DNA of 64,000 nt. Origin: Haliotis cracherodii (taxonomy: Eukaryota). The translations under genes and the position numbers were made by a program. This document shows, piece by piece, positions 7,882 to 24,591 of the stretch. A model generated the notes under the pieces. That model was not told where the DNA came from. It ran no database searches and was given only the letters and a program-made list of their open reading frames with translations. How positions within the stretch are numbered: the stretch's first letter is position 1; each line of letters starts with the position of its first letter. Location: the NCBI RefSeq assembly GCF_022045235.1, contig NW_027266275.1, positions 25,358,001-25,422,000 of the forward strand, in the 5' to 3' direction.

Positions 7882-8450
7882 TGTCACGGAACTGTGCTCC
7901 AATGATCAGGGGTGTCATTTAACACAAATAAAGTAATGATGAAAACGTGGTAATAGGTTCACAGGTCCATTATTAACATCTAACTGTACCAACAGATTAC
8001 ATGAAAAGGGATCAAATAAACCCAACCTGCGATGGCAAAGATCACTGAATAATTACATCAGAGCAACTGATGATGTAAATATCAAAATAGAGCGCTGAAC
8101 ATACGCTATCCAACGGTGTTACTAAAGATTTACAACAACCTACGTACCATTATTGAGGAGGCAAAAATGACCATAAGTGCATGGGAAATATCTGAGTGAA
8201 CATATAAATTACCCTTATGTTTGAAAATCATAGTCACCAAAACAATTTCAGCACATGAAAAAGGCAGCGAACATAACAGAGATAACAAACATCAGGGCAA
8301 TATATTGTGTGTGTGAGCCATTTAATCACAAGAGAATGAAATAGTCGCATCACTAATTCTCGAACACCGAATGCAATGACACTGCACAACGACGACCGCC
8401 GGACTTTGCCGAGCGGTGTCGAGGACCCGGAGAGGTCACTAGATCCTACC
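7882..8450 (-). mobile_element. Solo-LTR-like repeat, internally deleted copy
   Basis: Begins tgtcacggaactgtgctccaatgatcaggggtgtca. Collinear with 12149-12322 plus 14935-15305, and with the reverse complement of 23529-24591. Confidence 0.75.
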
Positions 8451-9628: not shown

Positions 9629-9711
9629 GAAATATATTTAGGTTTAGCTAGTTGAATGCCTCACTCGCGCCATGAACATGCTTTCAGGTATGGCGTATTA
9701 TTGGTGGTTGG

Positions 9712-9790
9712 AGTAGAAGTGGTAGTAGCAGTAGCAGTAGAAGTGGTAGTAGTAGTAGTAGTAGCAGTAGAAGTAGTAGTAGAAGTAGAA

Positions 9791-9836
<46 letters not shown>

Positions 9837-11343
9837 AAGAAGTAGTAGTAGTGGAAGTAGCAGTAGTAGTAGATGTAGTGAAGTAGAAGTGGAAGTAGTA
9901 GTAGTAGTAGTAGAAGTAGTAATAGTAGTAGTAGAAGTAGTAGTAGTAGTAGTAGTGGAAGTAGTAGTAGTAGAAGTAATAGTAGTAGTAGAAGTGGTAG
10001 TAGTAGTAGTAGCAGTAGAAGTAGTAGTAGAAGTAGTTGTAGTAGAAGTAGCAGTAGTAGTAGCAGTAGAAGTAGTAGTAGAAGTAGTTGTAGTTGAAGT
10101 AGCAGTAGTAGTAGTAGCAGTAGAAGTAGTAGTAGTAGTAGAAGTAGAAGTAGAAGTAGTAGTAGTAGTGGAAGTAGTAGTAGTAGTAGAAGTAGAAGTA
10201 GTAGTAGTAGTAGAAGTAGAAGTAGTAGTAGTGGAAGTAGTAGTAGTAGAAGTAATAGTAGTAGTAGAAGTGGTAGTAGTAGTAGCAGTAGAAGTAGTAG
10301 TAGAAGTAGTTGTAGTAGAAGTAGCAGTAGTAGTAGCAGTAGAAGTAGTAGTAGAAGTAGTTGAAGTAGCAGTAGTAGTAGTAGTAGCAGTAGAAGTANN
10401 NNNNNNNNNNNNNNNNNNNNNNNNNNNNNNNNNNNNNNNNNNNNNNNNNNNNNNNNNNNNNNNNNNNNNNNNNNNNNNNNNNNNNNNNNNNNNNNNNNNN
10501 NNNNNNNNNNNNNNNNNNNNNNNNNNNNNNNNNNNNNNNNNNNNNNNNNNNNNNNNNNNNNNNNNNNNNNNNNNNNNNNNNNNNNNNNNNNNNNNNNNNN
10601 NNNNNNNCGAAGTAGTAGTAGTAGGAGAAGTGGTAGTAGAAGTAGTCGTAGTAGTAGAAGTAGTAGTAGTAGTAGTGGAAGTAGTAGTAGTAGAAGTGGT
10701 AGTAGAAGTTGTAGTAGTAGTAGCAGTAGAAGTAGTAGTAGAAGTAGTTGTAGTAGAAGTAGCACTAGTAGTAGAAGTAGTAGAAGTAGTTGAAGTAGCA
10801 GTAGTAGTAGTAGTAGCAGTAGAAGTAGTAGTAGTAGTAGAAGTAGAAGTAGTAGTAGTAGTNNNNNNNNNNNNNNNNNNNNNNNNNNNNNNNNNNNNNN
10901 NNNNNNNNNNNNNNNNNNNNNNNNNNNNNNNNNNNNNNNNNNNNNNNNNNNNNNNNNNNNNNNNNNNNNNNNNNNNNNNNNNNNNNNNNNNNNNNNNNNN
11001 NNNNNNNNNNNNNNNNNNNNNNNNNNNNNNNNNNNNCGAAGTAGTAGTAGTAGTAGGAGAAGTGGTAGTAGAAGTAGTCGTAGTAGTAGAAGTAGTAGTA
11101 GTAGTAGTGGAAGTAGTAGTAGTAGAAGTGGTAGTAGAAGTTGTAGTAGTAGTAGCAGTAGAAGTAGTAGTAGAAGTAGTTGTAGTAGAAGTAGCACTAG
11201 TAGTAGAAGTAGTAGTAGTCGTAGTAGTGGAAGTAGTAGTAGTAGTAGCAGTAGAAGTAGTAGTAGTAGTAGAAGTAGTAGTAGTAGTAGTGGAAGTAGT
11301 AGTAGTAGTAGAAGTGGTAGTAGAAGTGGTAGTAGTAGTAGCA
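9712..11343. repeat. Long degenerate (GTA)n microsatellite with GAA/GCA/GTG variants, broken by assembly gaps
   Basis: Seen directly. N-gaps at 10399-10607, 10863-11036 and 11344-11545. Confidence 0.95.
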
Positions 11344-11912
11344 NNNNNNNNNNNNNNNNNNNNNNNNNNNNNNNNNNNNNNNNNNNNNNNNNNNNNNNNN
11401 NNNNNNNNNNNNNNNNNNNNNNNNNNNNNNNNNNNNNNNNNNNNNNNNNNNNNNNNNNNNNNNNNNNNNNNNNNNNNNNNNNNNNNNNNNNNNNNNNNNN
11501 NNNNNNNNNNNNNNNNNNNNNNNNNNNNNNNNNNNNNNNNNNNNNAATTGCGAGGGCCTGATTGCAAACCGCTTTGAACATATATAAGTTGTAATTTCTA
11601 TGTATACATGCTAGCTGGTGTACCGAAAGGTTTTCATAAATGGTGTTGCTAATATCCTCACCTTTCAACTGTGTGCTTTCAACCATTGCGAAAGACATAC
11701 CTTAGCAACAAGGCATTATGTATTTATTAAATAGACGCGGAAGGATTGCTGAACCTTATGTGATTGGGATTCTATATTTTGCGGGTCATGTTTGCTGTGC
11801 TGTGTTGTGTTGTGACTGTGAATGTCGCAATGAATCTGAATGTGGATTACGCCATATATCTGCACGTTAGATCGTAGACCAAGGCATTTCTTGGCACACG
11901 GGATTCTCAACC

Positions 11913-14900
11913 ATGGGTAAACTGAACCTTTTTGCAATAACTTTAAATAATCCCCAAGGAGTGTATTACCCGGGGCAGTTCCTTGAGGGTCATGTAACAG
12001 TGGACCTGAAAGAGGGAATGAAGATGAGAGGTAAGTACTGGATAAGACTTATCATACATCTAGACAGTTGTAAGAATATTATTAAACTATTAGACAGTAT
12101 GTGACCACATGAACATTTCAGTGTCAAATATGAAATTTTGATATAGTTGAGCTGTGCTCCAATGATCAGGGGTCTAAAAAAATAAGAATAAAGTACTAAT
12201 AAAAATGTGGTAATAGCTTTACAGGGTTATTAATAACAGCTCATTGTACCAATAGATGACATTAAAAAATTGATAAACACAATCTGCACTGACAGAGATC
12301 ACTGATTAATTAAATCAGCGCAGATATACAAGCGGCTTAATTAAGCAACTGTATTACCTGAATTGTTTGACAGGCATAACTTAGAAGTTGACGGATGACA
12401 AAGTAGACACAATCTATGGACAACAACACCCTTAATTACTGTAAAGGCGACGTTTCGCTATAGATCCTTATACCGTTGTCAAGCAAAAACCGTATATGCG
12501 TGTATTAGAGTATTAACTAACGTGTGGCAAATAGCAAACTAACTACTAAAAACTAGAAGAAAGTATCAGCTCATCAAAACAGTTTTGGACGACCTTGAAA
12601 AACATCAGCAAAAAGAAGGAAACTAAAAGTAACATCGAAATGCATGAGTGGTTTAATTACTTCAAAAATCTTTTCAGCGGTGATGATTCCACAAATAACC
12701 TCCAGTTGAACTCTTTTGATAATGATGAAACCAATTTTGCAACGGAAATATTAGATTCCCCAGTCTCAAAAGAAGAAAATAAATCTGTTATTCAAAATCG
12801 GAAAAACTTGAAAAGCCCGGGATTTGATAAACTTATAACAGAATTCTTTAAATACTGTATATTCAATACAATAATGGATACCTCTTACTTTCCAAAAGGT
12901 TGGACACTTGGAACTATCGTTCCAATTCACAAAAAAGGCTCAGTGACTGATGTTGAAAACTATAGGGGGATTACACTTACCAGTATATTCAGTAAGATAT
13001 TTCTTAGCATTATTAATAAACGCTTGGTATTGTGGTCGGAAGCACTTGATAAGATTGAGGAAGAGCAAGCAGGTTTTCGACAAGGTTACTCAACCACTGA
13101 TAATATGTTTATTCTCCAGGCTCTTATAGATAGGTATATTCAACGTAAACGTGGAAAAATGTATGCTATATTTGTAGATTTTTCGAAAGCATTCGATTCA
13201 GTCTGTAGAGATAAGTTATGGTATCTATTTAATTCACATGGTGTCAGTAATAAAATGGGTAAATTGTTATGTGGTATTTATAAGGAAGTTAAATCATGTG
13301 TTAAACAAAACGGCAAGTATTCAGATTCTTTTATATGTCATACTGATGTACGCCAAGGATGTGTATTAAGCCCTTTTTTGTTCTGTTTTTTTATTAATGA
13401 GCTTGCAGCCCAAATCAAAAGAAATTATGATGATGGTATACAATTACATCCTGAACTTATAAAAATATTTATGTTACTATTTGCAGATGATATAATCATG
13501 TTCTCGAGTACTGTGAAAGGTTTACAAACTTTGATAAATCAGCTAGAATTGTACTGTGATACGTGGAAACTTAATGCTAATCTAGATAAGACAAAAATTG
13601 TTGTATTTAGCAAAGGAAATACGCTGTCAAAAAACGAAAAGTGGTACTTTCGGGGACAATTACTCCAAACTGAAACCTCATATAAATATCTTGGTGTAAT
13701 ATTTTCAAGTAAATTATCATGGAACCGACATATATGTAATGCAGCAATCCAAGCTAAAAAGATGCTATTTGGCATTTTACAAACGTTTGAACATTTTAGC
13801 GAGTGTGCTTATAAATCTTTTTTCAAAATCTTTGACACAAAAATAGCTCCTATTCTTTCCTATGGTTCAGAAATATGGGGTTTTGCAGAGGCTAAAGAAA
13901 TTGAATCCGTACATTTATACGCATGCAAAAGATTTCTTGGTGTTAAACATAGTACGTCTAACGTAATGGTTTATGGTGAATGTGGTCGCATGCCCTTGTA
14001 TCACTACTTAAAAATCATAAGATACTGGTTAAAATTACTAAAAATGCCAGTAAGTAGATTGCCAAAAAAATGTTATAATATGATGCTATTGTATGAAAAG
14101 AATGGAGATCAAAATTGGGCATACAATGTTAAATGTCTACTGTATAAATGTGGGTATGGTTACATCTGGGAAAACCAATGTTTCTTAGAGAATCATGCCA
14201 TGTTCATATCGAAAATAAGGCAGACGCTTTTTGACATGTACTTTCAAACATGGAGATCTACTGTAGATGTTTCTAGCAAATGTGAATATTATAGATATTT
14301 TAAAATGCAAATATGCGCAGAAAAATATTTAACTGATGTAAATATAAGAAAATGCAGAATATCATTAACACAATTTAGATGCAGCTCACACAGGTTAATG
14401 GTTGAAGTTGGCAGGCACAACAAAATACCCAAATGTTCAATATTATGTAAACAATGTTCTTTAAATGTTGTCGAAGATGAATTTCATTTTCTACTTGTAT
14501 GTTGTAAATATGACAATTTAAGGAAAAAATATATTGAACAGAAATACTATGTACATCCAAATAAATACAAGTTTATCTCTTTAATTTTACATGTGAGCAA
14601 AACGGCTATACAAAATCTCTCTCTCTTTATATATCATGCCATGTTATTAAGAAATGAATCCTTGTAACATTCCTAACCGCTTCCACATTGTCATGTATTC
14701 TGTACTATGGGCCTGTGGCCTTACAGTTATATATGAATAAACTGATTGACAGGCATAACTTAGAAGTTGACGGATGACAAAGTAGACACAATCTATGGAC
14801 AACAACACCCTTAATTACTGTAAAGGCGACGTTTCGCTATAGATCCTTATACCGTTGTCAAGCAAAAACCGTATATGCGTGTATTAGAGTATTAACTAAC

Positions 14901-17900
14901 GTGTGGCAAATAGCAAACTAACTACTATATCTATACTGGAGTTGTAAGTATCAAAATAGATCGCTGGACATAAGCTATTCAACGGTATCAGGATTTACAA
15001 CAAGCTATGTACAATTATTAATGAGGCAAAAATGACCATAAATACACGAGAAATGTCTGTGTGTACTTATAAATTTCCCGAATGTTTGAAAATCATAGTG
15101 ACAAAAACATTTTAAATACAAGAATACGGTAGCGAACATACAAGAGATAACATACATCAAGTCAATCCATGGTCTGAGACTGCTAAGGGAATGAACTAGT
15201 CGGGCCACTAAGTCTCTAACACAGAAGGTACTAACGCTGTAGGATATCGACAGCCGGACCTTGCCGAGCGGTGCCGAAAATATAGCCGGTCACTAGACCG
15301 TGACATGAGGAAATTCGAGACACAGTGACTATGTGATTTAATAATCACAACGTATTTTATGCTCCACTTCATGTCAATTAAGATAGTTTTTAATGACAGG
15401 TCAACAGCCCGATTGACCACTCATAGATGCGTTCAATGTGATAGAGGGTTTCTCGTTAAATTTGTTACGATTTTATTTAGTTGAGGTGAGGTGAGGTGAA
15501 ATTGGATTTAACGTCGCGTCCAAGATTATTGCACTTATATAGCGACGTGCATGTACGTGTGTGTGTTTGTGTGGCTGCTTGTACTAGTCCGGACTGATGT
15601 TGATTTATAGTGCTAGCCCACTGAGATACCATGCCGCAGTTTAACATGAATAACCCACTAAGACACAGTATACTGACTCCGAGCCGACCAGTCCTTGTTT
15701 TAGCTCCTTAATGCCGAACGCCAGACAGGGTAACAACAAGTACCATCTTTTAACGTCTTTTGGTATGACGCGGCCGGGGATCGAACCCCGAACCTTCCGC
15801 TCTCCGGGCGGACGCTCTACCACAAGACCACGGAGGCGGTCTCATTTAGTAACTACAACAAATTGTATATCTTCAACCACTGACTATGATCAGACAAGGT
15901 TGTCTAACTGGTCTCCTTTATTTCTAGTTCAGGTGGATAAATCAGATGAAGGGAATCGGCTGTTTGATTTAAAGAGAATTGGCTATTACAAAAACTATAG
16001 TAGGCCTCTAAACATGCTACCAGCAGGATTTAAGCCCGTTACTACAGCGGAATGAAGTAACGGGGTCTTAGGACACGCGCAGTAAAGAACCCAGCAAGGC
16101 GCATGCACACAAGCACGTGGCCTCTATCGTTCCGGCAGCCAGCATTTTTTACACTCAACCAGTGTGCAATTCACTTCTCCGACCCCTAACCCCTGTACCA
16201 CCGAAACATGTTTAATTATTTAGTTAAAAGTAATTTCAGACTTTATTTATTTAGTGTTCAGTTTTCAACCACTGAAGGGAATTCACACTTGGGTTAACAG
16301 TATTATACATGTAGGTATTATTTCTCCCAAGCAGCCCCAATTATAGTATTACGCATAAGTGTACAATCCATGGCCACTGTCTGTACTGGTGGTAACATTC
16401 ACAGGGGGCAATGGCTGTCAATGCATCGGGCTCAGTCATCCTGAATGAGGGTACACAGTAGGAAGTAATAGATGTACCTGATTTGGTTACTTAACCAATG
16501 CCTGGTAGCAATCACTAAATCGGGCCCTTTGTGGCATGATCGATGGTCGATCATGCACAACACTTTGCAATGAGAATACCTGTTACCACCAACCATGGTT
16601 AATTGTGCATGGTAACATAGTCACGTGAGTATATCTGTTTTAGCTCATATATTAGGTCTTGTATACCTGCCTCGATATACAATGTATTATATGATTGGTA
16701 AATATGTCATTTCCTTACTGTATGTGAAGTATCCAATACATTCTTGACTGAATCTTACCAGCAGGTACACCATCACAGGTAGTAATAAACAAGGCGTACA
16801 CTCTTCGTGTACTGATCATGGGGACAATTTTCTTCTCACTGCTCAATTAGGGGAGATATGGATCAGAACCTAATCCAGCCTACATCGTCTTCAAAGATCA
16901 ATAAAAAGTTCGTTATGCGCATTAATAGTACTTTGACTGTGAATTTAACACAACACGATAGAAAAGATTGAGTAGAGATCTGTAAAAGAGTTTGTTATAA
17001 CCAACGTTCCCAAACACATATGTTTGCATATACAAAGAAATCCCGACAATGCATGAATATTTCTCACCAAAATATTTTTGCTGGTGGGAAATGATTTGAA
17101 GGTAATATAACGTCGTAATATATTTTCCACATCAATAGTACTTTGGCTTCTTTGATATGCATTTTGAAGTTGGATACTTGTTCTCAAGGTTGTTGAGTCG
17201 GTTGATGGTTGAGATTGCCATGTCTCCATGAAGACTTCTTACTTAGTAATTTGACTGTTGGTGTCACACCAACACGACAGAACAGATTAAGCAACTAAAT
17301 GTATGTTGTTCATAAATGCATCTTGGCAGGTCTTCATGAAACTCGAGAAGCTTGACTGGATTGTTGCATTCAATGTATCTGCTGTGGTTCTAGTCGAGTG
17401 CTATACTAATTGTGTTCATTTACATATCATGGTGTTAAGGATGTGGAATAAGGCCATTTTAAATGGACTTAATACTACCATCATTTAGTCTGCTTGGTTT
17501 ACGGATCCGCTGACCTTAAAAATCGAAATTTCAGCAACAAAAACAAATCATAATGACAAGGAGTTTCTAATACAGTCGACGGTGAAGGTCGCTTTGACAA
17601 TAAAAATGACATTGAAATGCCGCTGTCAGGTTTTAGATTTATAATATGTATGAAAGCAAAACCAGGCTGAGCTTTTATTTATTTTTATCACCTACTCATC
17701 CAAATCACTTCAAAATCTGTAAACCAAATACACAATTCTGTCCTCAAGGGTGTTTCTGGTGCACGGGCTTGTACACATTCAGCTGCCAACTAAAACAAGA
17801 GTTTTTTAAATCAAATGCGCCTATAACATAAGATGATAATATTTGGTCTTCTTCACAGGCATAAGACTACATTTCTTCGGTGGCGCCACTGTGAAATGGT

Positions 17901-23528: not shown

Positions 23529-24591
23529 TGTCACGGTCTAGTGCCTCTTTGTTCCCCGCTACCATATTCTTGTATCTAAAATGCTTTTTGTATTTGTGAT
23601 TTGCAAACATTAGGGGAATTTGTATCTACATTCAGAACTTTGTCATGTATTTATGGTCATGTTTGCCTCATCAGTAATTGTACATAACTTGTTGTAAATC
23701 GTTAATGATGCCGTTGGATAGCTGATGTTCAGCGCTTTATTTTGATCCTTATTTCTTCAGCGTTCATATAGTAGTTAGTTTGCTATTCGTGTTTCCCCGT
23801 GTTAAGAAACACACGTTAGCTGGGCGCCCCAGTTAGTTGTATTCCCCGGCGGTCCCGGAGAGGTTCCTCCCTCTGACGTCCGCGCGCGCTGTGTATCTAA
23901 AGTCTTTCTAGATCTTGTGTCCCTACCATTCAGGCTCCGTTAAATCCTTCATGATTGTCTCGCTACTGGAGTGGTCACGGTCGAGAGGTGGGTTCGGGGC
24001 TATGTCGATCTTGATTCTGACTTAGTCTGGTTGTACTGAACTAATCTTAGTTACTAGGGTTTGTAATACAATGTCTTGATAGTAATCCGTGGATAACCAA
24101 GTTTCCCGTGATTTCTAAGCTTTGAGTTACAAGTGTTTCTGAAACTAAGTGTTTCTGAGTTTTTGTAGCAATCCTCAGATGACCTACCTTCCCGCGATTG
24201 ACGAGGCACTTAGTAACTAGGGTTTCCAAAAGTCTATAATTAGTAATTCGTTGATGACCATCCTTCCTGTGGTTAACTAACTATTTGGAAACTCTAGTAT
24301 TTCCTTGTTCAGTCAAAGTGACAGAATCTTTAGTCGATTAAAACTAGTTGATATTCAGACGTATTCGTCTATTTTGTAGTCTAAGTGACTCATTTTAGGG
24401 ATAAGCTCTCAGTGTTTATTTCCCGTTATTTTGCTCAGCCGAGGTTACTCACTCTAAAGAGTGTTGAGTTAATTGACTCGGGTGTTATTAGCAGTTATTT
24501 TAATAAACCTGTGAACCTATTACCACGTTTTCTTTATCACTTTATTCTTATTTTATGACACCCCTGATCATTGGAGCACAGCTCTGTGACA
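23529..24591 (+). mobile_element. Solo-LTR-like element (~1.06 kb), longest copy of the family
   Basis: TGTCACGG...CTGTGACA inverted TG/CA termini and aataaa at ~24502. Homologous to 7882-8450 and 12149-15305. No matching TSD. Confidence 0.75.

What the first reader, a model, noticed from the sequence alone, without database searches (positions are those of the whole stretch)
12367..14927. Intact RT ORF bracketed by identical 182-bp direct repeats, giving a hammerhead-RT-hammerhead layout
Seen: a 690-codon uninterrupted RT frame lies exactly between two identical 182-bp repeats, each with an antisense hammerhead-like motif. Known: LINE TSDs are usually under ~20 bp, though longer ones occur. 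The simplest reading is a recent insertion with a giant TSD; this is supported by the repeat's 3' end matching the host LTR copy near 23767-23820. The outcome still mimics a retrozyme or Penelope unit. An antisense transcript would carry two minimal hammerheads 2379 nt apart, able in principle to dimerise and excise a unit-length RNA, and recombination between the repeats could delete the LINE cleanly.
Basis: partly seen in the sequence, partly recalled or inferred. Interest (0 to 1): 0.75.

Follow-up and report, generated by a model that had tools for sequence, protein, structure and literature searches.

The report
Truncated LINE with 183-bp target duplication
A young, 5'-truncated LINE retrotransposon copy landed inside older repeats in a gene intron and duplicated an unusually long 183 bp of its target, which happens to carry a Penelope-type minimal hammerhead relic, so the ribozyme-RT-ribozyme layout looks like an accident of insertion.

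Summary
Two identical 183-nt direct repeats (12367-12549, 14746-14928) bracket 2196 nt of LINE sequence whose ORF2 frame is open from the 5' junction to its stop.

The repeats are target DNA, not part of the element:
- 15 other copies of this LINE family have unrelated flanks, with flank repeats of at most 23 nt.
- The full 183 nt occurs only twice in the genome, both times here.
- Both duplication edges cut through older host repeats.

The LINE copy is not autonomous. It lacks ORF1 and the APE endonuclease that longer copies carry. It also has two in-frame deletions.

The "hammerhead" is real as a motif. It sits in a 128-nt relic of a family with at least 1678 candidate copies and a Penelope-like insertion architecture. 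It fits the published PLE minimal-hammerhead design, including the published U3-A8 core variant. Against function:
- Rfam models do not detect it.
- Helix I has only 2 bp.
- The window copy has a helix II mismatch.
- It lies antisense to both the RT and the host gene.

Verdict: an ordinary TPRT insertion with an outlier TSD. Public contigs could not test the two junctions or an empty allele. Other first readers of this scan noted Penelope-like hammerhead relics elsewhere in this genome.

The parts
11913..12029 (+). Context: first coding exon of an arrestin-domain gene, followed by a GT donor. The insertion lies in the downstream intron, in the sense orientation.
   Evidence: Translation read. 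Pfam Arrestin_N E 8.3e-05, 23.1 bits, just under the 24.9-bit cutoff.
12149..12322 (.). Left part of an older dispersed host repeat. Paralogous copies lie at 7889-8065 and 24584-24487 in the window.
   Evidence: Self-blast and alignment.
12359..12486 (-). 128-nt relic of a high-copy family with a Penelope-like insertion architecture. Its first 8 nt (12359-12366) lie outside the duplication.
   Evidence: 1678 candidates, about 90% identity. The family boundary is sharp at 12359 and 12486 in 28 copies. Foldback structure plus 9-13-nt TSDs by my reading.
12367..12549 (.). Left copy of the 183-nt target-site duplication. It comprises 120 nt of the Penelope-like relic plus 63 nt of other host sequence. 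The first 4 nt (TTGA) and the last A are ambiguous with the LINE's ends.
12447..12484 (-). Minimal-hammerhead-like motif, left copy: UUGACAA, an extra C, a 6-position helix II (5 of 6 paired here), then GAAA-CG-UC.
   Evidence: Design features compared with PMC4209133. No Rfam hit.
12550..14745 (+). 5'-truncated copy (2196 nt) of a young APE-type LINE family. The 3' end is ...AATAAACTGA.
   Evidence: 98-100% identity to 40 scored of 337 candidate copies. Longer copies continue upstream of 12550. The 3' end is shared by 15 of 15 same-oriented copies.
12595..14667 (+). ORF2 fragment covering RT and the C-terminal region, 690 codons as listed. The frame is open from 12544. There is no endonuclease domain. 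It has 10-codon and 2-codon in-frame deletions relative to L082.
14746..14928 (.). Right copy of the 183-nt target-site duplication.
14826..14863 (-). Minimal-hammerhead-like motif, right copy, identical to the left copy.
   Evidence: Identity of the two repeats and the motif layout.
14909..15277 (.). Right part of the older host repeat. It begins 20 nt inside the duplication and continues past it.
   Evidence: 2126 candidates. 34 of 38 scored non-self matches start at query 162-166, with 164 (= 14909) the commonest. Window paralogues are shown.

Best explanation
A transcript of a young APE-type LINE family was inserted by target-primed reverse transcription into an intron of an arrestin-domain gene, at a spot already occupied by nested older repeats. 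The bottom strand was nicked at about 12366|12367, where the target reads TTGA, the same unit as the element's (TTGA)n 3' tail. Reverse transcription started there. It ended, or was resolved, about 2.2 kb up the RNA, giving a 5'-truncated copy joined through 1 nt of microhomology. The top strand was opened 183 nt downstream of the first nick rather than the usual roughly 7-23 nt. Fill-in therefore duplicated 183 nt of target on both sides. Because the target held a relic of a Penelope-like element with its minimal hammerhead motif, the motif is now present twice, 2379 nt apart and antisense to the RT. What is shown: the repeats, the LINE identity and truncation, the short TSDs of sister copies, and the host origin of the 183 nt. 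What is inferred: the order and position of the nicks, and how the distant second break arose (element endonuclease, or a pre-existing nick or replication intermediate). The copy cannot move by itself and the layout has no demonstrated function.
For: (1) Identical 183-nt repeats abut the LINE's 5' and 3' ends exactly. (2) The LINE family has RVT_1. A longer copy has Exo_endo_phos (35.8 bits, cutoff 24.5) plus RVT_1 in an 1135-aa ORF2, and an upstream coiled-coil ORF. 5' truncation points vary among 29 copies and 4 longer loci. All 15 same-oriented copies share the 3' end ...AATAAACTGA. It is followed by TTGA in 11 of 15 and by two or more TTGA units in 5 of 15. (3) The same flank-repeat finder returns 187 nt for the window copy and 7-23 nt for 15 of 15 other truncated copies, and their flanks are all different. 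(4) In the whole genome only two places hold the full 183 nt, both in this window. Every other listed match covers at most the first 130 nt, at 81-97% identity. (5) The left edge of the duplication lies 8 nt inside the 128-nt family unit. The right edge lies 20 nt inside a second host repeat family that continues into the right flank. (6) Zero differences between the repeats and about 99% identity of the LINE to its sisters indicate a recent event. (7) Passages of PMC2912911 report, citing Gilbert et al., that 5'-truncated L1 insertions in cultured cells were often coupled with 'extremely long TSDs'.
Against: No read-level proof. In the contigs of four public runs, no listed piece bridges 12549|12550 or 14745|14746, and 12461 further pieces were not shown. 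So neither the two junctions nor a single-copy (empty) allele was seen independently of the assembly. Only 15 sister copies were examined out of at least 337 candidates, so the true TSD length distribution of the family is poorly sampled. In 5 to 7 of those 15 the best flank repeat is so short or so displaced that it may be chance. The pre-insertion sequence was not recovered from any paralogue or from the related species.
Confidence: 0.9

Rival explanations
1. The 183-nt repeats are terminal repeats carried by a composite mobile unit (a Penelope-like or retrozyme-like element: repeat-RT-repeat) that transposes as a whole.
For: The layout resembles a PLE, with an RT flanked by direct repeats that carry minimal hammerhead motifs about 2.4 kb apart. 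PMC4209133 describes min-HHR pairs about 3 kb apart flanking a PLE RT.
Against: The full 183 nt is found nowhere else in the genome. 15 of 15 other copies of the same RT element have unrelated flanks. The RT belongs to an APE-type LINE, and no GIY-YIG family was listed at E<=0.01. The motif is on the opposite strand to the ORF. The repeat's edges cut through two independent host repeat families.
Confidence: 0.02
2. Assembly artefact: the genome has one copy of the 183 nt, and the second copy was created when the assembler placed a LINE copy.
For: No independent contig listed bridges either LINE/repeat junction. The region is rich in high-copy repeats.
Against: Both junctions have the anatomy expected of TPRT. 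The 3' junction has TTGA tail homology, and the 5' junction has 1-nt microhomology at a truncation point inside ORF2. The nearest N run ends at 11545, about 820 nt away. The unique flanks adjoining each repeat copy are present with 0-1 differences in contigs from two or three independent studies: the left flank in X1, X5 and X8, the right flank in X1 and X5.
Confidence: 0.03
3. The pair of minimal hammerheads is functional. An antisense transcript folds the two motifs into a dimeric ribozyme and releases a 2379-nt RNA that may circularise.
For: The motif matches the published PLE min-HHR design. [quoted passage not shown] Two copies in one transcript is the arrangement proposed for dimeric cleavage.
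Against: No Rfam hammerhead match at E<=10, either here or in 20 family loci. There are only 2 contiguous helix I pairs. The window copies carry a G.G mismatch at the second pair of helix II that most family members lack. PLE min-HHRs with canonical cores cleaved only weakly in vitro. The motif strand is antisense to the host gene and the LINE, so dedicated antisense transcription would be needed. None of the listed runs that hold the stretch is on record as RNA.
Confidence: 0.02
4. Same insertion, but the long duplication did not come from a second cut by the element's endonuclease. The cDNA was captured at a pre-existing top-strand break or a replication or repair intermediate 183 nt away.
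For: Sister copies make 7-23-nt repeats, so 183 nt is outside the element's normal stagger. The copy is 5'-truncated with microhomology, the class linked to aberrant target alterations in L1 (PMC2912911 passages).
Against: Nothing in the sequence distinguishes the source of the second break. The sample of sister copies is small.
Confidence: 0.3

Closest known systems
5'-truncated LINE-1 insertions with 'extremely long TSDs' seen in cultured-cell retrotransposition assays (Gilbert et al., as cited in PMC2912911)
   Same: An APE-type non-LTR element, 5' truncation, microhomology at the 5' junction, and a target duplication far longer than the family norm.
   Different: A different LINE family, with a (TTGA)n tail rather than poly(A), in an invertebrate-like genome. 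It is a germline-fixed or segregating copy rather than a cell-culture event. The clade of this LINE was not determined here.
Penelope-like elements with min-HHR-bearing pseudo-LTRs (Cervera & de la Pena 2014, PMC4209133; Craig et al. 2021, PMC8557442)
   Same: An RT flanked by direct repeats that each contain a minimal hammerhead motif a few kb apart. The motif itself, and the 128-nt relic that carries it, look PLE-derived.
   Different: The RT is an APE LINE RT with no GIY-YIG match. The repeats are host target DNA unique to this locus. The motif is antisense to the ORF. The unit is not repeated elsewhere.
Retrozymes (plant LTR retrozymes, PMC4918200; metazoan non-LTR retrozymes, PMC7229834; both seen as search listings or abstracts only)
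   Same: Hammerhead motifs in direct repeats that could in principle delimit a unit-length RNA.
   Different: By my own knowledge, retrozymes are non-coding and non-autonomous. Their hammerheads are element-borne, and abundant circular RNAs have been demonstrated for them. Here the interior is a LINE fragment, and no RNA evidence exists.

Membership tests
APE-type non-LTR retrotransposon (LINE) inserted by TPRT | Reverse transcriptase domain of the non-LTR type | tested here: met
   RVT_1 E 3e-34 in the window ORF and 8.9e-35 in the L081 ORF2.
APE-type non-LTR retrotransposon (LINE) inserted by TPRT | N-terminal apurinic-like endonuclease in ORF2 of longer copies | tested here: met
   Exo_endo_phos E 9.4e-09, 35.8 bits against a cutoff of 24.5, in the L081 ORF2. 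The domain is absent from the window copy because of 5' truncation.
APE-type non-LTR retrotransposon (LINE) inserted by TPRT | No terminal repeats of its own, a common 3' end with a simple-repeat tail, and variable 5' truncation | tested here: met
   15 of 15 same-oriented copies end in ...AATAAACTGA, and 11 of 15 are then followed by TTGA. Truncation points differ among 29 copies and 4 longer loci.
APE-type non-LTR retrotransposon (LINE) inserted by TPRT | Flanking target-site duplications that differ from copy to copy | tested here: met
   Best flank repeats are 7-23 nt in 15 other copies, all with different sequences, against 183-187 nt here.
Penelope-like element unit (pLTR-RT-pLTR) | PLE/TERT-like RT with a GIY-YIG endonuclease | tested here: not met
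   Only RVT_1 and Exo_endo_phos families are listed at E<=0.01.
Penelope-like element unit (pLTR-RT-pLTR) | The flanking repeats belong to the element and recur with it | tested here: not met
   The full 183 nt occurs only at this locus. Sister copies have unrelated flanks.
Penelope-like element unit (pLTR-RT-pLTR) | Hammerhead on the same strand as the ORF (read from PMC8557442 and PMC4209133 passages; partly inference) | tested here: not met
   The motif is on the minus strand and the ORF on the plus strand.
PLE minimal hammerhead (min-HHR), for the motif alone | Catalytic core CUGANGA...GAAA or its published U3-A8 covariant | tested here: met
   UUGACAA...GAAA. The core is present in 25 of 28 sequences, and GAAA in 24 of 28. 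The U3-A8 variant is described in PMC4209133. A canonical-core version of the same 31-mer has 0 genome matches, against 966 for the U3-A8 form. So there is no within-family covariation.
PLE minimal hammerhead (min-HHR), for the motif alone | [quoted passage not shown] | tested here: met
   Extra C, then GGUAUA/UAUACC (6 of 6 pairs in 16 of 28 sequences, 5 of 6 in the window copy), then an ACGU palindrome. Criteria taken.
PLE minimal hammerhead (min-HHR), for the motif alone | Helix I (4-5 bp in Schistosoma families, 2 bp in the D. virilis variant) | tested here: inconclusive
   21 of 28 sequences have exactly 2 contiguous pairs, and the maximum is 3.
PLE minimal hammerhead (min-HHR), for the motif alone | Recognised by curated hammerhead covariance models | tested here: not met
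   No hammerhead family at E<=10 in 11800-15600 or in 20 family loci.
PLE minimal hammerhead (min-HHR), for the motif alone | Lies in the pLTR of an element that encodes a PLE RT; self-cleaves | not tested
Cleavage needs a bench assay.
Retrozyme | Non-coding unit bounded by element-borne hammerheads that yields circular RNA | tested here: not met
   The interior is a LINE ORF2 fragment. The repeats are host DNA.

The most novel reading that the evidence does not exclude
By duplicating a Penelope-type minimal hammerhead relic on both sides of a LINE fragment, the giant TSD has accidentally built a retrozyme-like unit. If the intron is transcribed antisense, the two U3-A8 motifs could pair through their ACGU palindromes, cleave, and release a 2379-nt antisense-LINE RNA that could circularise. 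That would be a route by which new ribozyme-bounded RNAs arise from ordinary insertions.
Probability: 0.015. Interest if true: 0.6.

Novelty: new member of a known kind. Interest (0 to 1): 0.2.

Why it matters
It matters mainly as a clean natural example. The family is young and abundant, with at least 337 candidate copies at 98-100% identity. One insertion has a TSD about ten times the family norm, with both junctions legible. A genome with hundreds of near-identical copies would allow a proper TSD-length distribution for a non-mammalian LINE. That bears on how second-strand cleavage is positioned. The locus also shows how a target duplication can copy a ribozyme relic and mimic a Penelope or retrozyme layout. 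This is a caution for motif-based annotation of hammerhead-flanked RT units. It changes nothing about known mechanisms.

Tried and rejected
1. Rfam scans for hammerhead models found none. I scanned the window at 11800-15600 and 20 family loci, both at E<=10. The only hits were chance snoRNA and miRNA-like matches caused by the foldback arms.

2. Reads. Contigs of X1, X5, X8 (organism A, three studies) and X10 (organism B) were laid on 11900-15400.
- The flanks are there, but no listed piece bridges either LINE/repeat junction.
- An empty allele has no 31-mer of its own, so contigs cannot show it.
- The listed joints (for example 12389 to 14815 in X5, side 22) come from paralogues of the 128-nt family, and I did not use them.
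- The question of an artefact or a polymorphism stays open.

3. A type III reading of the foldback tip as a hammerhead. I worked this through by hand and rejected it, because two extra nucleotides follow the would-be cleavage site.

4. A canonical-core (C3/G8) sister of the family motif. It has 0 genome matches, against 966 for the U3/A8 form. So there is no covariation evidence for or against function.

5. Walking from the 128-nt family to a long autonomous Penelope-like parent. Some copies extend to about 235-240 nt and most start at one boundary. No further loci could be cut out, so the parent was not found.

6. LINE clade. I ran no further search on it. The clade is undetermined.

7. Rows dropped before counts.
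- Of the 29 non-self LINE loci, 13 have a truncation point inside the locus. I used 12 of these. I dropped L058, whose junction is 57 nt from the locus end.
- L042 has no truncation point inside its locus; its two alignment pieces skip part of the LINE, and it was not examined for flank repeats. The remaining 15 loci reach the locus edge without a 5' junction.
- L082, L083 and L084 were added. L081 has no 5' junction identified.
- In one search, only the 15 non-self loci stored in the LINE's orientation were read for the 3' end.
- In one search, L008 gave no match and is left out (27 loci plus the window = 28).

8. Supplementary files of the papers were not opened. The hammerhead descriptors and family figures of PMC4209133 are in figures and supplements that I could not see. 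My comparison therefore rests on the text passages.

Full report
OBSERVATION

The window holds two identical direct repeats, at 12367-12549 and 14746-14928, with a start-to-start spacing of 2379 nt.
- The repeat finder reports 188 nt at 99%.
- The pairwise alignment shows an unbroken identical block of 183 nt.
- A 101-nt piece of the repeat occurs exactly twice in the window, against none in 100 shuffles.

Between the repeats lies an ORF at 12595-14667 on the + strand. It is 690 aa as listed and carries a Pfam RVT_1 domain at E 3e-34. Reading the sequence, the frame is already open from 12544, so it is open from the first base of the inserted element.

THE INSERT IS A 5'-TRUNCATED COPY OF A YOUNG LINE FAMILY

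The last 396 nt before the right repeat match 40 scored places (of 337 candidates) in the same genome at 98-100% identity.

The 3' end:
- All 15 non-self loci stored in the same orientation end in ...AATAAACTGA.
- Of these, 11 of 15 continue with TTGA, and 5 of 15 continue with two or more TTGA units.
- The family therefore has a fixed 3' end with a (TTGA)n tail.

The 5' extents differ from copy to copy. Four longer loci share 3273, 2500 and 1966 nt with each other. Three of them run on upstream of the point where the window copy stops, at 12549/12550.

One longer locus (L081) has an ORF2 of 1135 aa with Exo_endo_phos (E 9.4e-09, 35.8 bits, cutoff 24.5) followed by RVT_1. An upstream 392-aa ORF has only weak coiled-coil-type matches. 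This is the anatomy of an APE-type non-LTR retrotransposon.

The window copy keeps only the RT and C-terminal part of ORF2:
- It is 96% identical to L082 over 702 aligned positions.
- It has a 10-residue and a 2-residue in-frame gap. The first corresponds to a 30-nt deletion near 12857, seen against 3 of 3 longer copies.
- "Intact RT ORF" is therefore true only in the sense of "no stop or frameshift".
- The copy has no endonuclease, no ORF1 and no native start.

THE 183 NT ARE TARGET DNA, NOT PART OF THE ELEMENT

Four lines of evidence agree.

(i) One flank-repeat finder was run on the window copy and on 15 other truncated copies. It returns 187 nt for the window (one mismatch allowed, including tail bases) and 7-23 nt for all 15 others, and each of those has a different sequence (first pass; junctions of L082-L084). 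In 5 to 7 of the 15, the best repeat is short or displaced enough to be chance.

(ii) A whole-genome search with the 183 nt finds the full length only twice, both in this window. Every other listed match covers at most the first 130 nt, at 81-97% identity (40 of 1678 candidates scored).

(iii) Those partial matches define a 128-nt dispersed unit with sharp limits at 12359 and 12486 in 28 copies. The duplication starts 8 nt inside that unit.

(iv) The last 20 nt of the duplication belong to a second host repeat family with 2126 candidates. Of 38 scored non-self matches, 34 start at query 162-166, and the commonest start (164) equals window 14909. That family runs on into the right flank to 15277. 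Its paralogues in the window are at 7889-8422 and 23557-24584, the latter reversed. The match is confirmed, but I did not test whether the repeat is an LTR.

An element-borne terminal repeat would recur with the element and would not cut through two unrelated older repeats. A target-site duplication does exactly that.

MECHANISM

Shown:
- At the 3' junction, the left (original) copy of the target reads TTGA at its first four bases, the same as the element's tail unit. The 3' junction is therefore ambiguous by 4 nt.
- At the 5' junction, one A is shared between the end of the duplication and the LINE.

Inferred:
- The bottom strand was nicked at about 12366|12367, and the TTGA tail annealed to the target there.
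- Reverse transcription proceeded for about 2.2 kb.
- The 5' end was joined by microhomology.
- The top strand was opened 183 nt downstream, so that fill-in duplicated 178-183 nt.

The sequence cannot tell whether the distant second break was made by the element's endonuclease or was a pre-existing nick or replication intermediate.

Published context:
- Passages of PMC2912911 state that, in the HeLa assays of Gilbert et al., 5'-truncated L1 insertions were often coupled with extremely long TSDs, target deletions or very short TSDs.

The event is recent. There are no differences between the two repeats, and the LINE is about 99% identical to its sisters over 12860-14745.

THE HAMMERHEAD-LIKE MOTIF

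No Rfam family of hammerheads matches 11800-15600 on either strand at E<=10. None matches in 20 loci of the 128-nt family either.

Read by hand on the minus strand, however, the family's majority form runs as follows:
- UUGACAA
- one extra C
- GGUAUA, a 6-nt loop, then UAUACC
- GAAA, CG, UC

Text passages of Cervera & de la Pena 2014 (PMC4209133) describe Penelope-like-element minimal hammerheads with these same traits:
- a larger than usual helix II (6-8 bp)
- a conserved G10.1-C11.1 pair
- palindromic positions in place of a stable helix III, which implies action as dimers
- a short helix I (4-5 bp, and 2 bp in the D. virilis variant)
- a natural core covariant, U3-A8 instead of C3-G8, with about 1,300 hits in Schistosoma mansoni

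They also report that most motifs occur singly or as nearby pairs on opposite strands, and are probably related to truncated PLEs.

Counts over 27 family loci plus the window (L008 gave no match):

| Feature | Sequences with it (of 28) |
|---|---|
| Core UUGACAA | 25 |
| Helix II fully paired | 16 |
| GAAA | 24 |
| CG | 24 |
| UC | 26 |
| Exactly 2 contiguous helix I pairs (maximum 3) | 21 |

The changes among copies are one-sided, as expected from neutral decay. The exact U3-A8 31-mer occurs 966 times in the genome, and the same string with a canonical core occurs 0 times. There is therefore no covariation evidence within the family.

The window's two copies carry a substitution at 12458. Only 1 of 28 family copies shares the window's base there. 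It turns the second helix II pair into G.G, leaving 5 of 6 pairs.

THE 128-NT FAMILY LOOKS PENELOPE-DERIVED

In the 28 loci (my reading), a full direct arm is often followed by an inverted copy. The inverted copy is truncated at the hairpin tip and lacks the last ~31 nt. The whole structure is flanked by 9-13-nt duplications, for example in L007, L009, L010, L015 and L028. L024 has three tandem 38-nt motif units.

Passages of Craig et al. 2021 (PMC8557442) describe PLE insertions in the same terms: strong 5' truncation, partial tandems, an inverted 5'-truncated copy adjacent at the 5' end, and a 30-40-bp tail present at only one end.

Some copies extend to about 235-240 nt, and most start at one boundary. 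The family may therefore be a short non-autonomous derivative. I did not find an autonomous parent, so the PLE origin is an inference. I put it at about 0.65.

Earlier notes of this scan record the same U3-A8 motif on this window (s1-847046). They also record Penelope-like multi-hammerhead relics elsewhere in this genome (s1-834481, s1-829865). These are unchecked AI notes and I count them only as leads.

WHY THE LAYOUT IS AN ACCIDENT

- In PLEs the hammerheads lie in element-borne pseudo-LTRs near the 3' end of the transcript.
- Here the repeats are host DNA and the RT is a LINE RT. The motif lies on the strand opposite both to the ORF and to the host gene.
- The host gene's first coding exon is at 11913-12029 on the + strand (Arrestin_N E 8.3e-05, just under the cutoff). 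It is followed by a GT donor.
- A transcript that carries both motifs would need antisense transcription of the intron.
- PLE min-HHRs with canonical cores cleaved only weakly even as dimers in vitro.
- I therefore give the functional reading about 1-2%.

READS

Public contigs of three studies of the same species (X1, X5, X8) and one of a close relative (X10) were laid on 11900-15400.
- The left flank into the repeat (about 11942-12396) is present with 0-1 differences in X1, X5 and X8. In X10 it has 12 differences and 5 gaps.
- The right flank from the repeat outward (14839-15026) is present with 0 differences in X1 and X5. In X10 (14778-15025) it has 6 differences.
- No listed piece bridges 12549|12550 or 14745|14746, and 12461 pieces were not shown.
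- An empty allele has no 31-mer of its own.
- The assembly-artefact rival and the question of polymorphism therefore remain untested by reads. I rate the artefact as unlikely because of the junction anatomy.
- None of the listed runs that hold the stretch is on record as RNA.

COMPARISON AND VERDICT

This works like, and is, an ordinary target-primed LINE insertion. The unusual feature is the TSD length: 183 nt against 7-23 nt in 15 sisters. It is not a Penelope-like element or a retrozyme, because the defining features were tested and not met (see the membership table). The motif inside the repeat is a plausible member of the published PLE min-HHR U3-A8 class by design, but it is unproven as a ribozyme. 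Novelty: a new member of a known kind. Interest is low to modest.

Noticed in passing
window 12359-12486; loci L003-L030; G000 genome-wide: A high-copy family (1678 candidates for the 128-nt unit; 966 exact copies of its 31-nt motif) has a Penelope-like insertion architecture: a direct arm, an inverted arm truncated at the tip, a ~31-nt tail at one end, and 9-13-nt TSDs. It carries a U3-A8 minimal-hammerhead-like motif. No canonical-core sister exists (0 matches).
   Followed up: partly
L024 about 1417-1492; G000:C1:13406519-13406627: Short tandem arrays of the 38-39-nt hammerhead-like unit (three units in a row), next to an inverted copy.
   Followed up: no
window 9684-11700: A long Thr/Ser-rich (or Leu-rich, depending on frame) minisatellite with 9-, 12- and 15-nt periodicity (22 overlapping copies at 11008-11379). 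It is interrupted by three N runs (10399-10607, 10863-11036, 11344-11545), just upstream of the arrestin-like exon.
   Followed up: no
window 7889-8422, 12149-12322 + 14909-15277, 23557-24584 (reverse): Three copies of an older dispersed repeat (2126 candidates genome-wide). The copy at 23557-24584 carries about 700 nt of internal sequence that the copy at 7889-8422 lacks, and its end matches the last ~22 nt of the 183-nt duplication.
   Followed up: partly
window 12857 and 13998: The window's LINE copy lacks 30 nt and 6 nt (both in frame) that longer copies have. Contigs show the undeleted forms: the 30 nt in all four runs (loose ends at 12856), and the 6 nt (TATATA put in behind 13998) in X5, X8 and X10.
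   Followed up: partly
window 11913-12029 and 14730-14745: The LINE lies in the sense orientation in the intron after an Arrestin_N-like first exon, and it brings an AATAAA just before its 3' end. Whether this affects the host transcript was not examined.
   Followed up: no
runs X10-X14 (organism B): A second, closely related species holds about 0.54 of the sampled words. It has near-identical LINE contigs and the orthologous flanks at about 97% identity, so the LINE family appears to be young and shared by, or active in, both species.
   Followed up: no
L081 233-1969: Upstream of a longer LINE copy lies a 578-aa ORF with a DUF1759 match (E 4.1e-09). It is probably part of another retroelement.
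   Followed up: no
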